A stretch of DNA of 64,000 bases from the IMG/VR virus record IMGVR_UViG_3300038463_000730, positions 1 through 64,000 of that record; one strand, given 5' to 3'. This document shows positions 14,376 to 24,693 of the stretch, piece by piece (within the stretch, counting starts at the first letter, position 1; each line of letters starts with the position of its first letter). Below the pieces are notes generated by a model. It made no database searches. It saw only the letters and a list, made by a program, of their open reading frames with translations, and was not told the DNA's origin. The position numbers were made by a program, and so were the translations under genes.

Positions 14376-14627
14376 TTACCCAGTCCTCTTCAGCGCAATC
14401 TTGGCAACCATCTCACGGCCCTTGTCCGTGATGGTCAAGAGATGGTTCGACTCTTCGATCAACTCGCCCGACTTGGCCAGGCTGATCAACATCTGGTACT
14501 CGTCCAGCGTCATACCTTTGCTGTTGAACGCGGCGTAGAGATACCCGTTCGGGGCTCCTGACTTGCCAGCCTTGGCAACCGTTTCGAGAATGACCGCGAG
14601 ATACTGGTTCGCTTCGTTCCTGGTCAT
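14376..14627 (-). CDS. winged-helix-like small protein
   Basis: 83 aa; ends LLTITDKGREM, a typical wHTH wing ending. Confidence 0.55.
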   Translation of the reverse strand: MTRNEANQYLAVILETVAKAGKSGAPNGYLYAAFNSKGMTLDEYQMLISLAKSGELIEESNHLLTITDKGREMVAKIALKRTG

Positions 14628-14630
14628 GGT

Positions 14631-14780
14631 TCAGCCCTCCTCCGCCTTCAACATGTAGCCCGACAACACCTTGCGGATCTGAGCCAGGTTCGCCTCGGTG
14701 AATCCGATCGTTCCATCCTGCGGAGTATCGTGACGACCGACGTTGTGAGGTTCGTTCGATTCGTTCGGATCATTTGACAT
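14631..14780 (-). CDS. small hypothetical protein
   Basis: MSNDPNESNEPH...; GGAG RBS. Confidence 0.5.
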   Translation of the reverse strand: MSNDPNESNEPHNVGRHDTPQDGTIGFTEANLAQIRKVLSGYMLKAEEG

Positions 14781-14800
14781 GATCGTCTCCGGGAAAAGGA

Positions 14801-14940
14801 AGCCCCTTGTCGGACTCGAACCGACATGATCTAATCCCACCAGAGTGCTCTGGAGCACCGAGGCTCTCGCCTTCGTTGCTTGTAGATTCGATCTCCCCCG
14901 TCTAGCACTCGACGGGTTGCCCGCCAACCGGGCAAGGGGC
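14801..14940 (-). ncRNA. tRNA-like RNA (acceptor stem plus T-arm, non-canonical 116-nt core)
   Basis: GCCCCTT...GTCGG-TTCGAGT-CCGAC-AAGGGGC-T; perfect 7-bp acceptor, no canonical anticodon arm, no CCA. Confidence 0.65.
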
Positions 14941-14949
14941 GTAGCGAAG

Positions 14950-15780
14950 GCGCCTGTATGTAAACTTACTACCACTATGAGAATTAGATGCGTGAGTTGG
15001 GTTCGACCCTAGCGTCTGTCCCAACGATGATCAGTCGTCGGTTCTGCGCCTCACGCAACGGCTTTCGGCCTGTGCATTGCCTGTCGCTCGGTCCCGTTAT
15101 GTTCGTTAGAAAGCCTTGCTTCTAACTATCGGCTACGCTTCTGAGAGGAACACGAAAGTCTACTGATCCGAGCTGGTCTCTGTTGCAACAGAGCCAGTCA
15201 CGTCAGCTAACGAGTGTTCAATCGTCATCGGCACGTGCCTAACCCGTTCGCTACTCGCCTTGCATCTCGGCGCAATGTTGAATCGGGCTGTTTGGTGGGA
15301 CGCAGGATACACTCAGGTTATGTAGGCTTCCCCGGAGCTACCTCTCATCACAATGAGAACTGGGTCGTAGTTGCAAAGGCGGTTCTTCTTTCCAGAGCGC
15401 TGGCCTTGCGGCGTTCTGGTAAAGCTAACCCGAGGCCCTTAGCAACGGGTCACGTCCTACTCACTATTCGGCGTGACCTTCTATAGACCGTTAGTAGCGT
15501 TGTATTACTACGGGGCCGTTGCCGCCTTACCGCGGCGCGGGCATACCCTTGGTCATTGGACACCTCTTTCGCTGCGAAGATGTTTGCCCGTTCACCCGCT
15601 GACCGTCATGGGTTAGTAGGGTCGCACTCTCTCACAAGGTTCGCGCAGACCATCATTGGGTATAAACTTAGTTCGCTGCTACACCATTGGAGCACCTCAC
15701 GTTTGAACCGGAGGATTCTTCGCGTCCTCCGTAGCTTGTACTGCCGAAAGGCACCGTGTCAACGGCGCCGGATCGGTAGA
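14950..15780 (-). ncRNA. candidate large structured ncRNA (~0.8 kb)
   Basis: No credible ORF; GNRA-capped hairpins on minus strand (15060, 15392, 15521); GAAUA/AGUA internal motif at 15448-15478. Confidence 0.6.
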
Positions 15781-15788
15781 GGTTCGTT

Positions 15789-16145
15789 TCACTCTCGTAG
15801 ACCACGCATCACGCCACGAACGAACGGGACAGTAAACGGAGCTGAGAGCAGCAGCCCTCCAAGTACACCCGGGTACATGGCGACGACAATCGCTGCGACG
15901 AATGCAACGATTGAACCAACACACTGAAAGGCAATGTTGCTGGCTTTCTCATTCGGTTGTTTGGTTGGTGGCTTTCGAGGTTGCACCGTAGGTGCTGGCC
16001 TAGGTGCTGGCCTGCTATCGGGAGAGAGCTTAGTCTCCTCGATCAATCTACACGCTTGGAAGGCAGCATTACGCGCTTCATCTTTTGGAGTATTAGGATG
16101 CGCGGCCAGAGCGATTAGCTTCCTTATCTTTTCGGCCTTATCCAT
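15789..16145 (-). CDS. DUF2786-like N-terminal domain protein with C-terminal TM segments
   Basis: MDKAEKIRKLIALAAHPNTPKDEARNAAFQACRLI. Confidence 0.65.
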   Translation of the reverse strand: MDKAEKIRKLIALAAHPNTPKDEARNAAFQACRLIEETKLSPDSRPAPRPAPTVQPRKPPTKQPNEKASNIAFQCVGSIVAFVAAIVVAMYPGVLGGLLLSAPFTVPFVRGVMRGLRE

Positions 16146-16186
16146 GTTTCAGCACACTCCGGGCCTAGGCCGATATATAGATCGGT

Positions 16187-16744
16187 ATGAAAGATTACGA
16201 TACCTGTCCAGGTTGCCGTGGAACGAAACGTAAAGTAGCGAAGCTATGTCGCCCTTGCCGCTACCCAGTCGGTAAAACTAAAGTATGCAAAGGCCCCTGC
16301 GGTCTCGACTTGCCTATTACGGCATTTCGTATCCGAACAAGGAAGACGCCAAAGCCTCGCTCACGTTGTATGGGATGTGAAAGTAAGGCAGAACGCAAGC
16401 GTTACAATGCCAGACCTATTGCAACCCGCAAGGTATCCACTCGCCGATGGGAGAAGAACAACCCAGAGAAGCATAAGGCGCAACTGCTACGCGCTCGGGT
16501 TCGCAAGCTCGGGTTAGCTTCTGATATGGATAGGATCATTGCGTTTGCCGCGCAGTATTCCGCCTGTCCATTGTGCGGCACTACTAAGAGTGACTTGGCT
16601 GGTTCTCGCATGTGCATTGACCACGACCACAAGACCGGCAAGTTTCGTGGTCTTATCTGCGAAGCATGTAACTTTGGCATCGGCCAATGCAAAGATAGCC
16701 CGGCAACATTACGTGCTGCGGCAGACTATCTCGAATCAGCCTAA
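16187..16744 (+). CDS. recombination endonuclease VII-like homing endonuclease
   Basis: CPLC...IDHDHKTGKFRGLICEACNFGIG...D...LRAAADYL; antisense to block. Confidence 0.9.
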   Translation: MKDYDTCPGCRGTKRKVAKLCRPCRYPVGKTKVCKGPCGLDLPITAFRIRTRKTPKPRSRCMGCESKAERKRYNARPIATRKVSTRRWEKNNPEKHKAQLLRARVRKLGLASDMDRIIAFAAQYSACPLCGTTKSDLAGSRMCIDHDHKTGKFRGLICEACNFGIGQCKDSPATLRAAADYLESA

Positions 16745-18355: not shown

Positions 18356-18455
18356 TGGTGCCCGCCCAGGGGATCGAACCCCGGCATACTCCCGACCTTG
18401 TACTTCGGTAAGGGTACTTCCCAACCTATCCTACTCTACCTTCACCTGGCCAGGC
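18356..18455 (-). ncRNA. tRNA-like RNA with encoded CCA
   Basis: GCCTGGC...CGGGG-TTCGATC-CCCTG-GGCGGGC-A-CCA; interior is not a cloverleaf. Confidence 0.6.
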
Positions 18456-18536
18456 TTAGTAGAGTCCTTTCAAATTGGGTTCTCGGTAACTTGCCAGTCA
18501 CCGCCTGTTACGGGCTAACTTGGTCAACCAGTCGCG

Positions 18537-20286: not shown

Positions 20287-20301
20287 CAATGGAATGGAGC
20301 C
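20287..20301 (-). promoter_or_regulatory. 15-nt motif copy 1 (GGCTCCATTCCATTG on minus strand)
   Basis: Exact repeat, five copies. Confidence 0.7.
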
Positions 20302-20654: not shown

Positions 20655-21092
20655 TCAGTGAACCTCCTCAGTCGTTTCGATCTTCGTCTCTTCCTTCTTG
20701 GGCCAGCCGAATGCCACCTCCTCGATGTGAAGCCGGAAGTCCTCGTCCCACGAATGGCGAACGAGCGGCTCGATGTCGCCGAGGATCTTGATCAATCGGG
20801 CCTCCTCCTCATCCCGGAGCACGTGCCAGGCATCCGTCGCCCGACGATACTGCTCGCGCACAACATTGTGCGCCTCCTCTTCCGGTGACTCGGGGCGAGG
20901 GTTGGACTTGTACCACTCCTCGATCATCGCGTTCAGTGCATCACGCTTGCCGATTTCTCGACCGAGCCGCACGTACTCATGATCGCGGAAGTTCTCCGCG
21001 TCACGCTCTTCCTCGAACGCACGAAGCGTCTTCTCGAAACGATCGCAGCAACGACAACCCGAAACGAACGTAACAACGTGAATCGTCTTCAT
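20655..21092 (-). CDS. hypothetical protein
   Basis: 145 aa ORF; GGAG RBS. Confidence 0.7.
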   Translation of the reverse strand: MKTIHVVTFVSGCRCCDRFEKTLRAFEEERDAENFRDHEYVRLGREIGKRDALNAMIEEWYKSNPRPESPEEEAHNVVREQYRRATDAWHVLRDEEEARLIKILGDIEPLVRHSWDEDFRLHIEEVAFGWPKKEETKIETTEEVH

Positions 21093-21186: not shown

Positions 21187-21193
21187 CCATTAG

Positions 21194-21235
21194 AGCGCGC
21201 CGGGGGAATCGAACCCCCGTATACCATAGCGCGCT
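21194..21235 (-). ncRNA. 42-nt tRNA minihelix-like element
   Basis: AGCGCGC-TATGGTATA-CGGGGG-TTCGATT-CCCCCG-GCGCGCT-C. Confidence 0.6.
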
Positions 21236-21750: not shown

Positions 21751-21765
21751 CAATGGAATGGAGCC
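21751..21765 (-). promoter_or_regulatory. 15-nt motif copy 2
   Basis: Exact CAATGGAATGGAGCC on plus strand. Confidence 0.7.
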
Positions 21766-21847: not shown

Positions 21848-22648
21848 TCAGCCACGTGAGAACGTGACACGGGTTTCCGAGACCTTGACTCCGAATCCCA
21901 AGGTAGCCCTCGGATTGTGAGTCTGGTGTGTGATCGGTCCCTTCTTCTCGCGGCTCGTTTGACTTGCCGCCGCCGATGCTGCTTCGACGTAGGTGACATG
22001 GATCACCTTCGGATTACCGCTCGGATAGTTCTGGCAGACGCGGATCGTACCCTCGTCCGTCTCCACGGGTTCCTGCTCTTCGTAACGAACCCGCATACCC
22101 TGATGCTGGCCTCGTTCGGACTTCAGGACCCACCAACGGCAACCCGCACGGTGAGCCTCGAACGCCTTGTCATAGTTCGCCGTACGAGTCTCCTCGCCCG
22201 GAATCTCGACAATGAGCTGAAACGGCTTGAATGCGCCGGAGTGTTTCACGACACGCTTCGCCGTGAAACCGCCGATGAAGTACACACCCCACTTCTCCCA
22301 GAGATCCGTATCGACGTTCTCTTGGAAGATAGCGGACTTCTCGTTCCGCTTCGCCGCCTCATAGGCAACGGCCACGTCCGGGTCTCCGAGCCCGATATCA
22401 CGAGCGAGTTTCCCGCATGAGAACACGGCCTTGTTCCGCGTCTCCAGATCCGTCTCGCACAACGCATTGTGCAGTTTGAACGCCAGGGTCTCCCCTTCGC
22501 TCGCATCCTTCGGAACGCTCACGCGCCCTTCGGGCTTTGCCTTCGCCGGAGCCTTTGCAGGTTTCGGCGCTTCTTTCGCGACGGGCTTACCGATCACCTT
22601 GATCGGGGTGATCGTACCCGTTTCACGGTTTCGCTTGATCACTTGCAT
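21848..22648 (-). CDS. hypothetical protein
   Basis: 266 aa from MQVIKRN; GGAGG RBS. Confidence 0.75.
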   Translation of the reverse strand: MQVIKRNRETGTITPIKVIGKPVAKEAPKPAKAPAKAKPEGRVSVPKDASEGETLAFKLHNALCETDLETRNKAVFSCGKLARDIGLGDPDVAVAYEAAKRNEKSAIFQENVDTDLWEKWGVYFIGGFTAKRVVKHSGAFKPFQLIVEIPGEETRTANYDKAFEAHRAGCRWWVLKSERGQHQGMRVRYEEQEPVETDEGTIRVCQNYPSGNPKVIHVTYVEAASAAASQTSREKKGPITHQTHNPRATLGFGVKVSETRVTFSRG

Positions 22649-22673
22649 TCGCGTCACCTCCGTTGTTGTTTCG

Positions 22674-22688
22674 CAATGGAATGGAGCC
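22674..22688 (-). promoter_or_regulatory. 15-nt motif copy 3
   Basis: Exact repeat. Confidence 0.7.
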
Positions 22689-22689
22689 A

Positions 22690-23955
22690 ATTGCTTAAGT
22701 TGCGAGTTTCCTCACATTCAAACCCACGTATCTAACACGGAGTCGTCATCATCGAACGGTAACTCCCATACTACAGCAATCAAGCGTAGATATGTTGTGT
22801 AGCAGATTCGTAGGCTTGAATGCGAAGGCCAGGGTTCTCACCGTATGGTTTAGCCGATACAGGAAAACCCTGGCTTCGCAAGTTTATGCTTAGAGACCAA
22901 CCTACCAACTAACCCGCTCGGTTCACATACACTTTACCCCATATGACACTGATAGGCGTCCGGCATTGCTCGCCGATGACTCTCTCCTACCTATGGCCGT
23001 GTTGAGATTACCACTAGACCTAGACGCCTGGCATTATCCCGCCAATGGCTTTCTTCTCGGTTTCGTGATCCGATGCACACATTCAAGTGTGACACTGGTA
23101 TCTAGTAACACGATGCAACCCGTAACAGCGAATTAGTAACTCACGTATCACCCGGCACAACCCACTAGGCTTGCGTACCTACTTCCTTTCACACGGCGTT
23201 TTTACACGCCTCACCATGTATGTAGCCTTTCGGCATCACGGCGAGTTTTCATGTTACTCGCTTTCGGCCCCTACACACTTACCCGGTCAACGATTCCAAT
23301 TCACGCTCAACCTACACACCAGGCCAAGGCCAAGTTTTCAGCTAATCATGTTTCGGTTTCTCGCGGGTTAGCATGTAGCTTTGCGCGCCCCTAGCAGATT
23401 GCGAAGACAATACGCTTTCGGTACGGCGCTTCGCATACGAAGAGCTATCTCCTGTCCCTTAGCGATACGGCTTACAAGGCCATACGGTATACCCCAATGT
23501 CAAAGGCGCCCGGTACTAACTCACCGATAGCTTTCTCCTTTGACCTTTCGGTCACTCCGCACCCTCTAACACTGGACTAGTCGCGACCCCTTGGCATCGC
23601 AACCCTATCCCGTAGAGTGAGAGTCATGGTTACTGTCCCTTTCGGAACGCCAACTAGTTAGCTGGCCCGACCTACTCGTTTCGGATATACTATCTCGCCT
23701 ACTCTAGGGAGACAGTCTCTCCGTTTCTTATAGTCGTCCTACTTGCAACGGGTTCCCATTCCCGATGCGTTCAGCATTAGCCCACCTCTCCCGTCAAGGA
23801 GCGAGGTCATATGATGGGCGCCACGTTATGCCCTAGAGGCTAGACTTACTCCGAGGACCCCGTAGGGTAGGCATACCGCCCGGAGGGAACTAGCCACCCT
23901 ACCAGCGAGCGGCTGATAGGTGGGTCGTGGGAGTCGGATTCGGCTCCACCCACTG
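22690..23955 (-). ncRNA. candidate giant structured ncRNA (~1.3 kb)
   Basis: ORF-free; many minus-strand GAAA/GNRA hairpins (23225, 23541, 23410s) and long stem at 22822-22879. Confidence 0.65.
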
Positions 23956-23959
23956 CAAG

Positions 23960-23974
23960 CAATGGAATGGAGCC
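23960..23974 (-). promoter_or_regulatory. 15-nt motif copy 4
   Basis: Exact repeat. Confidence 0.7.
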
Positions 23975-24059
23975 TAGTCATCTCGCGGAACCGAATCGCG
24001 AGACCGCGGCAACCCCGCTTTTCAGCGGGGCGGCATCGCTGCGGCTCAAACCCGGACCA

Positions 24060-24074
24060 CAATGGAATGGAGCC
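24060..24074 (-). promoter_or_regulatory. 15-nt motif copy 5
   Basis: Exact repeat; preceded on minus strand by palindrome GAGCCTACCGATCGGTAGGCTC. Confidence 0.7.
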
Positions 24075-24124
24075 TACCGATCGGTAGGCTCTGATTCTTG
24101 TGAGAGTAGATCGCGCGCCCGCGT

Positions 24125-24351
24125 TGCACGTACCATGCCAGCCCAATTTGACGCGAGACAGCAATGAGACGACGCGCTGCGTTATGGCATGTTTCGAGCT
24201 ATATAATGCATAAAAGATACCTACAATGTCTTTACAATAACATTGTAATTGATCTGGTATGATCTAAGCTATATATTGCACGGAACATACCAATCATACT
24301 CCAGGCCTGGCACGGAACTTGCCTGCCACCCGCCGCTGGCACGAATCTTGC
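24125..24351. promoter_or_regulatory. cluster of sigma54 (-24/-12)-like sites, both strands
   Basis: TGGCACG-N4-TTGC exact at 24308 and 24337 (+); GG-N10-GC variants at 24185 and 24255 (+), 24125 and 24277 (-). Confidence 0.6.
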
Positions 24352-24368
24352 CTGGATAGAGCGACAAA

Positions 24369-24442
24369 CTGGTGAAAACTCTGGCAGATAACCTGGCAGA
24401 TAACCTGGTGAAACTCTGGCGGTAAAACTTGGCGAAACTGGG
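24369..24442. repeat. phased 10-12-nt CTGG repeats
   Basis: CTGGTGAAAACT, CTGGCAGATAAC x2, CTGGTGAAACT, CTGGCGGTAAAA, CTTGGCGAAA, CTGGG. Confidence 0.75.
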
Positions 24443-24693
24443 ATCAACCCAGCTACGACTCCGATATTCCCCGGCATTGCCCAGCGCTACTGAATCAAAA
24501 CCAGATTAAGCACATCGGTTATTTCAATTTCTTTTGGGAAACTAAAGATCTGGACATAATTCTTGGTCTGGAACGGATCTCTAACCTCGTTTCTAGCCAG
24601 AAGCCAAACCGTTTCCAGTACTTAGCCGATAAAAAAGAAATTTTACGTATCTAGCTGGCCGTTCCTGCTCCCGAATCAGCATACCTTTGAGGA

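What the first reader, a model, noticed from the sequence alone, without database searches (positions are those of the whole stretch)
14950..15780. Second large structured RNA candidate (~0.8 kb) directly upstream of a tRNA-like element
Seen: an ORF-free segment with minus-strand GNRA hairpins (GCCGCG-GTAA-GGCGGC at 15521-15536; CCAGAACGCC-GCAA-GG...TCTGG at 15392-15419; GGCC-GAAA-GCC at 15060-15070), a stem with GAAUA/AGUA loop-E-like nucleotides (15448-15478) and a palindrome at 15178-15193. Established: GOLLD RNAs are about this size and usually lie near tRNA genes. Inference: GOLLD-like or a new class.
Basis: partly seen in the sequence, partly recalled or inferred. Interest (0 to 1): 0.7.

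Follow-up and report, generated by a model that had tools for sequence, protein, structure and literature searches.

The report
Phage noncoding stretch, tRNA-like end
A 1-kb stretch without genes in a 435-kb peat phage genome is real and ends in a convincing tRNA-shaped element, but it is not a GOLLD or ROOL RNA, its body folds no better than neighbouring genes, and no relative or RNA data could be found to show that it is a structured RNA of its own.

Summary
The gene-free segment is real. Window 14781-15788 has stops in all six frames, no SD-led ORF and no codon periodicity. It is the second-longest low-coding stretch of the 434,688-bp phage record; the 22.7-24.0 kb element is the longest. 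It lies on the minus strand between co-oriented genes.

Its 3' end (14801-14940) is a robust tRNA-like fold with a perfect 7-bp acceptor stem, a canonical T arm and a fold z of -4.4. It is not a canonical tRNA. It is one of three tRNA-like elements in intergenic spacers of this operon. The minihelix type recurs after consecutive genes in distant relatives, with compensatory changes in 4 of 12 pairs.

The claim of a large ornate RNA is weak for this segment:
- The core has an MFE z of -1.4, while coding controls span -0.4 to -4.2.
- GNRA hairpins are not enriched (P = 0.09).
- Only one of the three cited GNRA loops is a closed tetraloop.
- GOLLD, ROOL and all other Rfam models give no hit.
- No homologue, second copy or RNA-seq coverage was found, so covariation and transcription remain untested.

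Best reading (about 0.4): a co-transcribed noncoding intercistronic RNA whose 3' boundary is set by a tRNA-like processing signal.

The parts
14781..15788 (-). Gene-free, stop-filled intergenic stretch ('RNA1' plus tRNA-like element) between two co-oriented genes
   Evidence: Stops in all six frames. No SD-led ORF. No codon periodicity. Gene callers leave it empty. Second-longest low-coding stretch of the genome.
14801..14940 (-). TLE-C, an expanded tRNA-like element. It has a perfect 7-bp acceptor stem (GCCCCUU/AAGGGGC), a 6-bp D-like hairpin, a 6-bp anticodon-like hairpin with an 8-nt loop, a branched insertion of about 67 nt in the variable-arm position, a canonical T arm (14809-14825) and discriminator U. 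No CCA is encoded.
   Evidence: MFE fold is a cloverleaf-like junction, z -4.38, 0 of 200 shuffles as good. CM built from the phage's own tRNAs scores 13.6 bits, E 0.034. Acceptor scan. ARAGORN and Rfam tRNA do not call it. The 24-nt T arm plus 3' acceptor is identical to a 74-nt tRNA(UAA) of three Actinomycetota MAGs.
14943..15088 (-). 3' multibranch domain of the noncoding stretch. It includes a 69-nt cloverleaf-ish module (14989-15057) with a 7-bp stem and the loop CUGAUCA.
   Evidence: Helices with P 0.93-0.99. Domain z only -2.16. tRNA CM scores 6.7 bits, E 3.2, not significant.
15173..15197 (-). Near-perfect palindromic hairpin (10 bp, loop UGCA)
   Evidence: P 0.98-1.00. It lies in the only core window with a notable z (15100-15299, -2.95).
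15370..15446 (-). 77-nt extended hairpin. The MFE/ensemble apex is CGC[CGCAAGGCCA]GCG (15398-15413); the GCC-GCAA-GGC tetraloop hairpin at 15403-15412, the only closed GNRA tetraloop of the core, is a local alternative at that apex.
   Evidence: Helices with P 0.90-0.99. GNRA scan.
15448..15478 (-). 7-bp stem enclosing a GAAUA / GUGA / GUAGG internal region (loop-E or sarcin-ricin-like by eye)
   Evidence: Stem P 1.00. The motif assignment is by inspection only and was not tested.
15521..15536 (-). 5-bp GC hairpin with hexaloop GGUAAG (not a closed GNRA tetraloop)
   Evidence: P 0.99. Absent from the GNRA scan.
15750..15769 (-). 8-bp hairpin 20 nt after the stop codon of the upstream gene
   Evidence: P 0.97. 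Not followed by a U tract, and not listed as a terminator.
15789..16145 (-). Upstream gene: 118-aa protein with a DUF2786 domain and a C-terminal hydrophobic tail
   Evidence: Pfam PF10979, E 1.4e-6. Called by JGI.
14631..14780 (-). Downstream gene: 49-aa ORF. Its GGAG Shine-Dalgarno sequence starts 11 nt after the discriminator base of TLE-C.
   Evidence: Sequence. Called by JGI.
18360..18515 (-). TLE-B, a second expanded tRNA-like element. It has a T arm and a 3' strand GGCGGGC-A-CCA, starts 21 nt after a stop codon and ends 45 nt (counted from the encoded CCA) before the next ATG.
   Evidence: CM 13.2 bits, E 0.043. Sequence. Fold closes the acceptor and T arm.
21193..21234 (-). TLE-A, a 42-nt acceptor plus T-arm minihelix. 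It starts 12 nt after a stop codon.
   Evidence: CM 24.4 bits, E 2.8e-5. The same architecture is repeated after consecutive genes in relatives, with 4 of 12 pairs compensatory and 100% paired.

Best explanation
The segment is a noncoding intercistronic part of a long leftward (minus-strand) phage operon. It is probably transcribed together with its neighbours.

Its 3' end is marked by a tRNA-derived structure, TLE-C. The acceptor/T-arm stack of TLE-C is the shape recognised by tRNA-processing enzymes: RNase P at its 5' side, and RNase Z or 3' trimming at its 3' side. Cleavage there would release an upstream noncoding RNA of about 0.85 kb with a defined 3' end. It would also give the downstream mRNA a 5' end only a few bases before its ribosome-binding site. 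This resembles tRNA punctuation of mitochondrial transcripts, or MALAT1/mascRNA.

What is shown: the segment is noncoding; TLE-C folds like a tRNA; tRNA-like elements recur in intergenic spacers of this operon and of distant relatives, with compensatory changes.

What is inferred: co-transcription, cleavage by RNase P or Z, and any function of the 0.85-kb body. The body is only moderately structured, a string of local hairpins.
For: Noncoding status.

Orientation: the segment lies between co-oriented genes. No sigma-70-like promoter and no intrinsic terminator lies on the minus strand inside it. The operon's own 15-nt upstream motif is absent there.

TLE-C: cloverleaf-like MFE with z -4.38, a perfect 7-bp acceptor adjoining a canonical T arm, and a hit by the phage's own tRNA CM.

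Family: three tRNA-like elements lie on the same strand in intergenic spacers, each just upstream of a gene start (21092, 18314, 14780). In relatives that share only one protein gene (31-51% identity), 42-nt minihelices follow consecutive genes. A larger ACCA-ended element sits 50 nt before a start codon. Between the window and its relatives, 4 of 12 minihelix pairs change on both sides and all cells stay paired, against 1 of 500 shuffles.

Background: RNase P is known to process non-tRNA substrates including phage RNAs, tRNA-like structures and operon mRNAs (PMC11143913).

Genome economy: a 1-kb untranslated stretch is exceptional in this genome, which argues for retention by selection.
Against: There are no transcription or cleavage data: no listed RNA run holds the locus, and the three metatranscriptomes laid show nothing for the flanking genes either.

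No homologue of the segment was found, so there is no conservation or covariation test.

The body folds no better than coding controls (core z -1.4), and its 5' third (15500-15788) has z >= 0.

TLE-C scores weakly as a tRNA (13.6 bits) and rests on one sequence.

In TLE-A and TLE-B the element directly follows a protein gene, so by analogy the body could be a decayed gene rather than an RNA gene.
Confidence: 0.4

Rival explanations
1. Relic DNA. The body is the decayed remnant of one or more former genes, either protein genes or a small tRNA cluster. TLE-C and the cloverleaf-ish module at 14989-15057 are what is left. The stretch has no function of its own.
For: The MFE z of the body is within the range of coding controls and GNRA hairpins are not enriched. 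TLE-A and TLE-B each follow a protein gene, so the body occupies the position of a gene. TLE-C shares its acceptor stem and T arm exactly with a real tRNA(UAA). A second weak tRNA-shaped module lies next to it. The phage carries 24 or more tRNA genes elsewhere, all on the same strand.
Against: There is no residual codon periodicity. tblastx finds no similarity to any other part of the genome, and the tRNA CM finds no further hits in the 5' 700 nt. Phage genomes usually lose useless DNA, yet this is the second-longest noncoding stretch in 435 kb. The sequence is identical in peat samples taken from 2020 to 2025, though that only shows a single clone.
Confidence: 0.25
2. A new class of large structured phage RNA, similar in biology to GOLLD and ROOL (phage-borne, next to tRNA-like genes, possibly self-assembling) but unrelated in sequence and fold.
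For: The size, phage origin and adjacency to a tRNA-like element fit the GOLLD/ROOL setting. Many hairpins have pair probability above 0.9, and the minus-strand ensemble is better defined than the plus-strand one (36% against 19% of bases with P >= 0.9). Two loops are self-complementary (UGCA, UGAUCA) and could kiss. The same operon lineage holds other long noncoding stretches with strong folding signals: 22.7-24.0 kb z -5.8, L022 z -4.9, L034 gaps z -6.6 and -8.5.
Against: There is no Rfam match. The core z is only -1.4. No homologue was found in phage, plasmid, viral, metagenome or genome collections. There is no similarity to the other long noncoding stretches. No RNA evidence exists.
Confidence: 0.15
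3. A DNA-level element, such as a replication origin, partition or packaging site, or protein-binding control region. The palindrome at 15173-15197 would be an operator.
For: It is a long noncoding stretch with a 24-nt near-perfect palindrome.
Against: There are no iterons, tandem repeats or AT-rich tract; only short chance-level repeats occur. GC content is the same as in the flanks. The segment sits inside a co-directional operon. The obvious control region of this arm, with repeated motifs and divergent transcription, lies at 24.1-24.6 kb.
Confidence: 0.08
4. TLE-C is the attP core of an integrating element: a copy of the 3' end of a host tRNA gene.
For: A 24-25-nt stretch is identical to the 3' end of a tRNA(UAA) in three Actinomycetota MAGs. 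The record is labelled 'provirus'.
Against: The 5' acceptor strand is present as well, and the whole folds as a closed tRNA-like unit. No tyrosine integrase or large serine recombinase is found anywhere in the 434,688-bp record. The element lies inside an operon, 15 kb from the record's end. Two further tRNA-like elements with different sequences lie in the same operon.
Confidence: 0.04

Closest known systems
GOLLD RNA (Rfam RF02032)
   Same: Both are encoded by phages, both are about 0.8 kb or more of noncoding sequence, and both lie next to tRNA-type genes (10.1101/2024.12.08.627333).
   Different: The GOLLD covariance model gives no match at E <= 10 in the whole genome. There is no evidence here for an ornate conserved fold, and the body's MFE z is ordinary.
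ROOL RNA (Rfam RF03087)
   Same: Both are phage or prophage-borne large noncoding RNAs, often near tRNA islands.
   Different: There is no match at E <= 10; note that the control genomes did not ring for this model either. The window's real tRNA island lies far away, at 266-420 kb.
tRNA-like 3'-end or punctuation signals (mitochondrial tRNA punctuation; MALAT1/mascRNA; RNase P cleavage of operon mRNAs and phage RNAs)
   Same: A tRNA-shaped module sits at the junction between an upstream RNA and a downstream cistron. An acceptor/T-arm stack is present. The module recurs at several junctions and in relatives, with covariation. RNase P substrates of this kind are known (PMC11143913).
   Different: Cleavage is not shown here. 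The host and its RNase P are unknown. To my knowledge the elements have not been described for phage operons; that statement rests on my own knowledge and two literature searches, not on an exhaustive review.
Canonical phage tRNA genes (class II tRNAs with a long variable arm)
   Same: TLE-C has an acceptor stem, a T arm with a GUUCGAGUC loop, D-like and anticodon-like hairpins, and an extra arm in the variable position. Its acceptor and T arm are identical to those of a real tRNA(UAA).
   Different: There are no linker bases at positions 8-9. The D-like stem has 6 bp with a 5-nt loop. The anticodon-like loop has 8 nt. The 'variable arm' is a branched insertion of about 67 nt. ARAGORN and the Rfam tRNA model do not call it, and the own-tRNA CM gives only 13.6 bits.
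RNase III processing sites between early genes of T7-type phages
   Same: Both are repeated structured RNA elements in the spacers of a long polycistronic phage operon (comparison from my own knowledge).
   Different: The elements here are tRNA-shaped, not long irregular hairpins, which implies a different nuclease.

Membership tests
GOLLD (RF02032) | Match to the family covariance model (conserved 3' domain) | tested here: not met
   No match at E <= 10 in the whole 434,688-bp genome. No Rfam gathering hit in the window. Nothing at E <= 10 in 14500-16200.
GOLLD (RF02032) | Phage or prophage origin and proximity to tRNA genes | tested here: met
   The record is a phage genome. A tRNA-like element lies directly 3'. 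This feature is shared with many non-members.
GOLLD (RF02032) | Extensive covarying secondary structure across homologues | not testable with these tools
   No homologue was found in any collection searched.
ROOL (RF03087) | Match to the family covariance model | tested here: not met
   No match at E <= 10 in the genome. Caveat: no control genome rang for this model.
Canonical tRNA | Recognised by tRNA finders or models | tested here: not met
   ARAGORN finds 0 genes in the window. The Rfam tRNA model is not among matches at E <= 10. The own-tRNA CM gives 13.6 bits against 50-83 bits for the phage's ARAGORN-called tRNAs.
Canonical tRNA | 7-bp acceptor stem stacked on a 5-bp T stem with a GTTCRANNC loop | tested here: met
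   GCCCCUU/AAGGGGC is perfect and directly adjoins GUCGG-UUCGAGU-CCGAC.
Canonical tRNA | 7-nt anticodon loop, and D arm with the 8-9 linker | tested here: not met
   The loop is the 8-nt GAGUGCUA. The D-like hairpin follows the acceptor stem without a linker.
tRNA-like intergenic elements of this phage lineage (defined here) | Acceptor plus T-arm stack, on the operon strand, in a spacer just upstream of a gene start | tested here: met
   TLE-C ends 20 nt before the ATG at 14780. TLE-A and TLE-B are placed likewise. Relatives show the same placement.
tRNA-like intergenic elements of this phage lineage (defined here) | Conservation with compensatory changes | tested here: inconclusive
   Met for the minihelix type (TLE-A: 4 of 12 pairs compensatory). 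No counterpart of TLE-C itself was found.
Group I / group II introns | Match to intron models; flanking exons of one gene | tested here: not met
   No Rfam intron hit. Group-II D1D4-1 (RF01998) has no match. The flanking ORFs are separate genes with their own start and stop codons.
tmRNA | tRNA-like domain formed by the 5' and 3' ends, enclosing a tag ORF; G3-U70 | tested here: not met
   ARAGORN finds no tmRNA at default settings, and relaxed settings give only overlapping implausible calls. The acceptor closes over 139 nt with C3-G70.

The most novel reading that the evidence does not exclude
This jumbo-phage lineage uses tRNA-shaped elements as punctuation marks of a long operon. The 1-kb stretch is a stable, previously unknown large noncoding RNA whose 3' end is made by tRNA-processing enzymes, a phage counterpart of MALAT1/mascRNA. 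It would belong to a set of lineage-specific large structured RNAs together with the 22.7-24.0 kb element and the gaps in relatives.
Probability: 0.15. Interest if true: 0.75.

Novelty: new variant of a known kind. Interest (0 to 1): 0.42.

Why it matters
If the tRNA-like elements are processing signals, this would be a phage operon punctuated by tRNA mimics. That mechanism is known from mitochondria and a few eukaryotic long noncoding RNAs, but to my knowledge it has not been described for phages. It would also explain why large phage noncoding RNAs such as GOLLD and ROOL so often sit beside tRNA genes: the tRNA shape could define their ends. For the 1-kb body alone the stakes are lower. It may be an RNA with its own function, or only a spacer.

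Tried and rejected
- Rfam: a search of the whole window at gathering thresholds, and of 14500-16200 and 22600-24300 at E <= 10, gave nothing meaningful. GOLLD, ROOL and group-II D1D4-1 searched alone over the whole genome gave no match.
- tRNA and tmRNA finders: ARAGORN at default settings finds none in the window. At relaxed thresholds it gives only overlapping, implausible tRNA and tmRNA calls.
- Second copy or paralogue in the genome: none by blastn or tblastx. There is no similarity to the 22.7-24.0 kb element.
- Alternative genetic code: all three stop codons occur in every frame, so no single reassignment opens a frame. No other code was applied.
- Homologue hunt:
  - DNA against phage and plasmid records: no match.
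  - Flanking and nearby proteins against viral contigs, four scans: none.
  - Metagenome contigs, two scans: none.
  - The 5.8-billion-protein index for both direct neighbours: one weak DUF2786 hit, and the 83-aa protein finds only itself.
  - Exhaustive search with the 428-aa protein: one homologue, on a 2.9-kb contig.
  - A profile search with the 280-aa protein found six further homologues, seven with the one on L022. They share only that gene with the window and carry no counterpart of the segment.
  - blastn of the segment against 401 Actinomycetota genomes: only chance-level matches of 23-41 nt. One of those genomes, G339, is unpublished; no positive claim rests on it.
- Population variation: contigs and reads from seven DNA runs are 100% identical, so no covariation signal exists.
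- Transcription: no RNA run holds the locus, and three metatranscriptomes of one of the studies gave no contig on 13000-18900. This is no evidence of silence.
- Long-range pairing: the 17-nt complementarity between 15247-15263 and the 5' strand of TLE-C is no stronger than in shuffles (P = 0.46).
- A weak colinear tblastx chain between L038 and 14584-15029 was not confirmed by blastn or protein comparison.
- Four short matches between RNA1 hairpins and the second L034 gap are not colinear and have E 0.3-1.
- The attP reading was rejected for lack of any integrase.

Full report
**Setting.** The window is the first 64 kb of a 434,688-bp IMG/VR record labelled 'provirus'. The record was cut from a 502,994-bp JGI peat-metagenome contig; window coordinates are offset by 77 bases from that contig. 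The record carries 24 ARAGORN-called tRNA genes at 266-420 kb, all on the minus strand. Most of its proteins have no family match, so it looks like a jumbo phage. Window 1-24 kb has 54-57% G+C against about 47% elsewhere. It is a densely packed array of mostly small genes, most of them on the minus strand. Annotated genes include DUF2786, DUF6011, DUF7007, endonuclease VII, HNH and a metallophosphatase.

**The observation.** The stretch between the stop of the DUF2786 gene (15789) and the start of a 49-aa ORF (14780) is 1008 nt long.
- All six frames hold 6-19 stops, and each of the three minus-strand frames holds all three stop codons, so no code change opens a frame.
- No Shine-Dalgarno-led ORF of 20 codons or more exists on the minus strand.
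- G+C shows no 3-periodicity.
- The JGI and Logan gene callers call no separate gene there.
- A codon-usage scan of the whole genome ranks 14880-15791 as the second-longest low-coding stretch, behind only 22712-23915. tRNA clusters account for several of the next-longest stretches.

The cited hairpins exist and are well defined in the partition function. However, only GCC-GCAA-GGC (15403-15412) is a closed GNRA tetraloop. The 'GTAA' loop is the hexaloop GGUAAG and the 'GAAA' loop is the pentaloop CGAAA. Three GNRA hairpins in the core against 1.1 expected gives P = 0.09.

**Is the body unusually structured?** It is not, by energy.
- With a 300-nt span limit and 24 dinucleotide shuffles, the core 14950-15788 has z = -1.4, and the whole stretch has z = -3.4.
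- Ten 1-kb controls from the same operon range from -0.4 to -4.2.
- The 22.7-24.0 kb element reaches -5.8.
- In 200-nt windows only 15100-15299 (-2.95) and the tRNA-like part stand out, and 15500-15788 is at or above zero.
- The minus-strand ensemble is better defined than the plus-strand one (36% against 19% of bases with P >= 0.9), but 3 of 10 shuffles and 1 of 10 coding controls come close.

**The tRNA-like element.** ARAGORN and Rfam do not call a tRNA. I built a covariance model from 17 of the phage's own tRNAs. On the minus strand of 12-25 kb it finds three elements:
- 21193-21234: 24.4 bits, E 2.8e-5.
- 14799-14865: 13.6 bits, E 0.034.
- 18358-18417: 13.2 bits, E 0.043.

The element at the end of the stretch, TLE-C (14801-14940), has a perfect 7-bp acceptor stem directly adjoining a canonical T arm. 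It folds as a cloverleaf-like junction with z = -4.38, and 0 of 200 shuffles fold as well. It departs from a tRNA in four ways: no 8-9 linker, a 6-bp D-like stem, an 8-nt anticodon-like loop, and a branched insertion of about 67 nt where the variable arm would be.

Its T arm plus 3' acceptor (24 nt) and its 5' acceptor strand are identical to those of a 74-nt tRNA(UAA) found in three Actinomycetota MAGs. The flanks of those genes share nothing with the window. TLE-C is therefore tRNA-derived. An attP reading is unlikely, because the record holds no tyrosine integrase or large serine recombinase and the element is a closed fold inside an operon.

**A family of tRNA-like elements.**
- TLE-A is a 42-nt acceptor plus T-arm minihelix that starts 12 nt after a stop codon.
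- TLE-B (about 156 nt) starts 21 nt after a stop codon, ends in GGCGGGC-A-CCA, and lies 45 nt before the next ATG.
- TLE-C ends 20 nt before the next ATG, with the Shine-Dalgarno sequence in between.

A profile search with the 280-aa protein of 21848-22657 found distant relatives at 31-51% identity. Their contigs share only that gene with the window. Even so, they carry near-identical 42-nt minihelices after consecutive genes, for example L036 5022, 6201 and 7193. These have conserved flanks and a CTCTAACC box, which the window also has before the start at 21092. One relative also has a larger ACCA-ended element 50 nt before a start codon. Between the window and its relatives, 4 of 12 minihelix pairs change on both sides and all cells stay paired, against 1 of 500 shuffles. 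This amounts to two lineages, so it is modest but real evidence that the shape is selected at the RNA level.

**Known families.** GOLLD (RF02032) and ROOL (RF03087) give no match at E <= 10 in the whole genome. No Rfam family reaches threshold in the window. The segment shares only the genomic setting of GOLLD and ROOL: phage-borne and near tRNAs.

**Homologues and expression.** I found none of either.
- There were no DNA matches in phage or plasmid records and no second copy in the genome.
- Six collection scans found no relatives.
- Both direct neighbour proteins are orphans or nearly so.
- 401 Actinomycetota genomes gave only chance matches.
- Seven DNA runs from peat hold the identical sequence, so there is no population variation.
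- No RNA run holds it, and three metatranscriptomes show nothing for the flanking genes either.

**Context from relatives.** Long noncoding stretches recur in this operon lineage:
- at least 560 nt upstream of the homologous gene in L022 (z -4.9);
- a 1087-nt stop-filled gap in L034, L035 and L038 (z -6.6);
- a 529-nt gap in L034 (z -8.5).

One of three coding controls in L034 also reached z -5.8, so these z values are noisy. None of these stretches resembles the segment or the 22.7-24.0 kb element in sequence. The segment studied here has the weakest folding signal of the set.

**Verdict.** The hairpin details are overstated. The GOLLD-like reading fails its membership test, and a new RNA class can be neither shown nor excluded.

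My best reading (about 0.4) is a co-transcribed noncoding intercistronic RNA whose 3' boundary is set by a tRNA-derived processing signal. That signal belongs to a family of tRNA-like punctuation elements in this phage lineage. RNase P is known to cleave such non-tRNA substrates (PMC11143913), but cleavage here is inferred.

The rivals are:
- a decayed gene or tRNA relic (0.25);
- a new ornate RNA (0.15);
- a DNA-level site (0.08);
- attP (0.04).

Noticed in passing
window 22691-23960 (minus strand): This is the other long noncoding element and the longest low-coding stretch of the genome. It has a much stronger folding signal (z -5.8) and 5 closed GNRA hairpins on the minus strand against 0 on the plus strand. 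There is no Rfam match. A relative (L022 1-663) has a structured noncoding stretch (z -4.9) at the same position upstream of the homologous gene, without sequence similarity. It is a better candidate for a structured RNA than the finding studied here.
   Followed up: partly
window 20287-20301, 21751-21765, 22674-22688, 23960-23974, 24060-24074 (minus strand): There are five exact copies of the 15-mer GGCTCCATTCCATTG, found nowhere else in the 434,688-bp genome, with no conserved flanks. At least one sits about 20 nt upstream of a ribosome-binding site. L022 has a diverged counterpart (TTATTCATCTTCGG-like, three copies). It is probably a phage-specific promoter or 5'-leader signal. None lies upstream of the segment studied.
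   Followed up: partly
window 21193-21234 and 18360-18515; L036 5022-5063, 6201-6242, 7193-7234; L034 9912-9953 and 14347-14421: tRNA-like minihelices, and larger ACCA-ended tRNA-like elements, sit in the spacers after consecutive genes in the window and in distant relatives. They show compensatory changes and a conserved CTCTAACC box downstream. This looks like a repeated intercistronic cassette.
   Followed up: yes
G000:C1:420700-420872 (minus strand), beyond the window: A 173-nt element has a perfect 7-bp acceptor stem, a D-like hairpin, a T arm and a long arm of about 115 nt in place of the anticodon arm. It lies next to tRNA-Thr. It is another expanded tRNA-like RNA, or a tRNA with an insertion, that ARAGORN does not call.
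   Followed up: partly
G000:C1:373599-374804 (minus strand), beyond the window: This cluster holds a tRNA with anticodon CUA (an amber suppressor type) and three tRNAs that ARAGORN reports with two-base anticodons because of odd anticodon loops. It may point to stop-codon recoding or unusual decoding in this phage. No alternative code was applied here.
   Followed up: no
L034 11615-12701 (= L035 3867-4950, L038 1416-2707) and L034 12930-13458: Relatives carry their own stop-filled gaps of 1087 nt and 529 nt with very low folding energies (z -6.6 and -8.5), though one coding control in L034 reached -5.8. The first gap is 98-100% identical among three contigs whose adjacent 300-aa gene is 91% identical. 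There is no Rfam match for the first gap (L035 and L038 were scanned); the second gap, found only in L034, was not scanned.
   Followed up: partly
window 24100-24600: The G+C content drops from about 56% to about 47% here. The spacer holds repeated GCCAG-type motifs and AT-rich palindromes between the minus-strand arm and the plus-strand genes. It is probably a divergent control region, or the seam between two modules of different origin.
   Followed up: no
window 14802-14826 and 14934-14940; L026-L028: The T arm and acceptor stem of the tRNA-like element match exactly a 74-nt tRNA(UAA) of three small-genome Actinomycetota MAGs. That tRNA is class I in size although its anticodon is that of a leucine tRNA. 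Together with the actinophage-type domains in this arm (DUF6011, DUF2786, DUF7007), this hints at an actinobacterial connection.
   Followed up: partly
whole record G000: The record is labelled 'provirus' and 100% complete, but no tyrosine integrase or large serine recombinase was found in 434,688 bp. The viral region starts 77 nt from the end of its 502,994-bp contig. The provirus label may be an artefact of host-like genes at the far end.
   Followed up: partly
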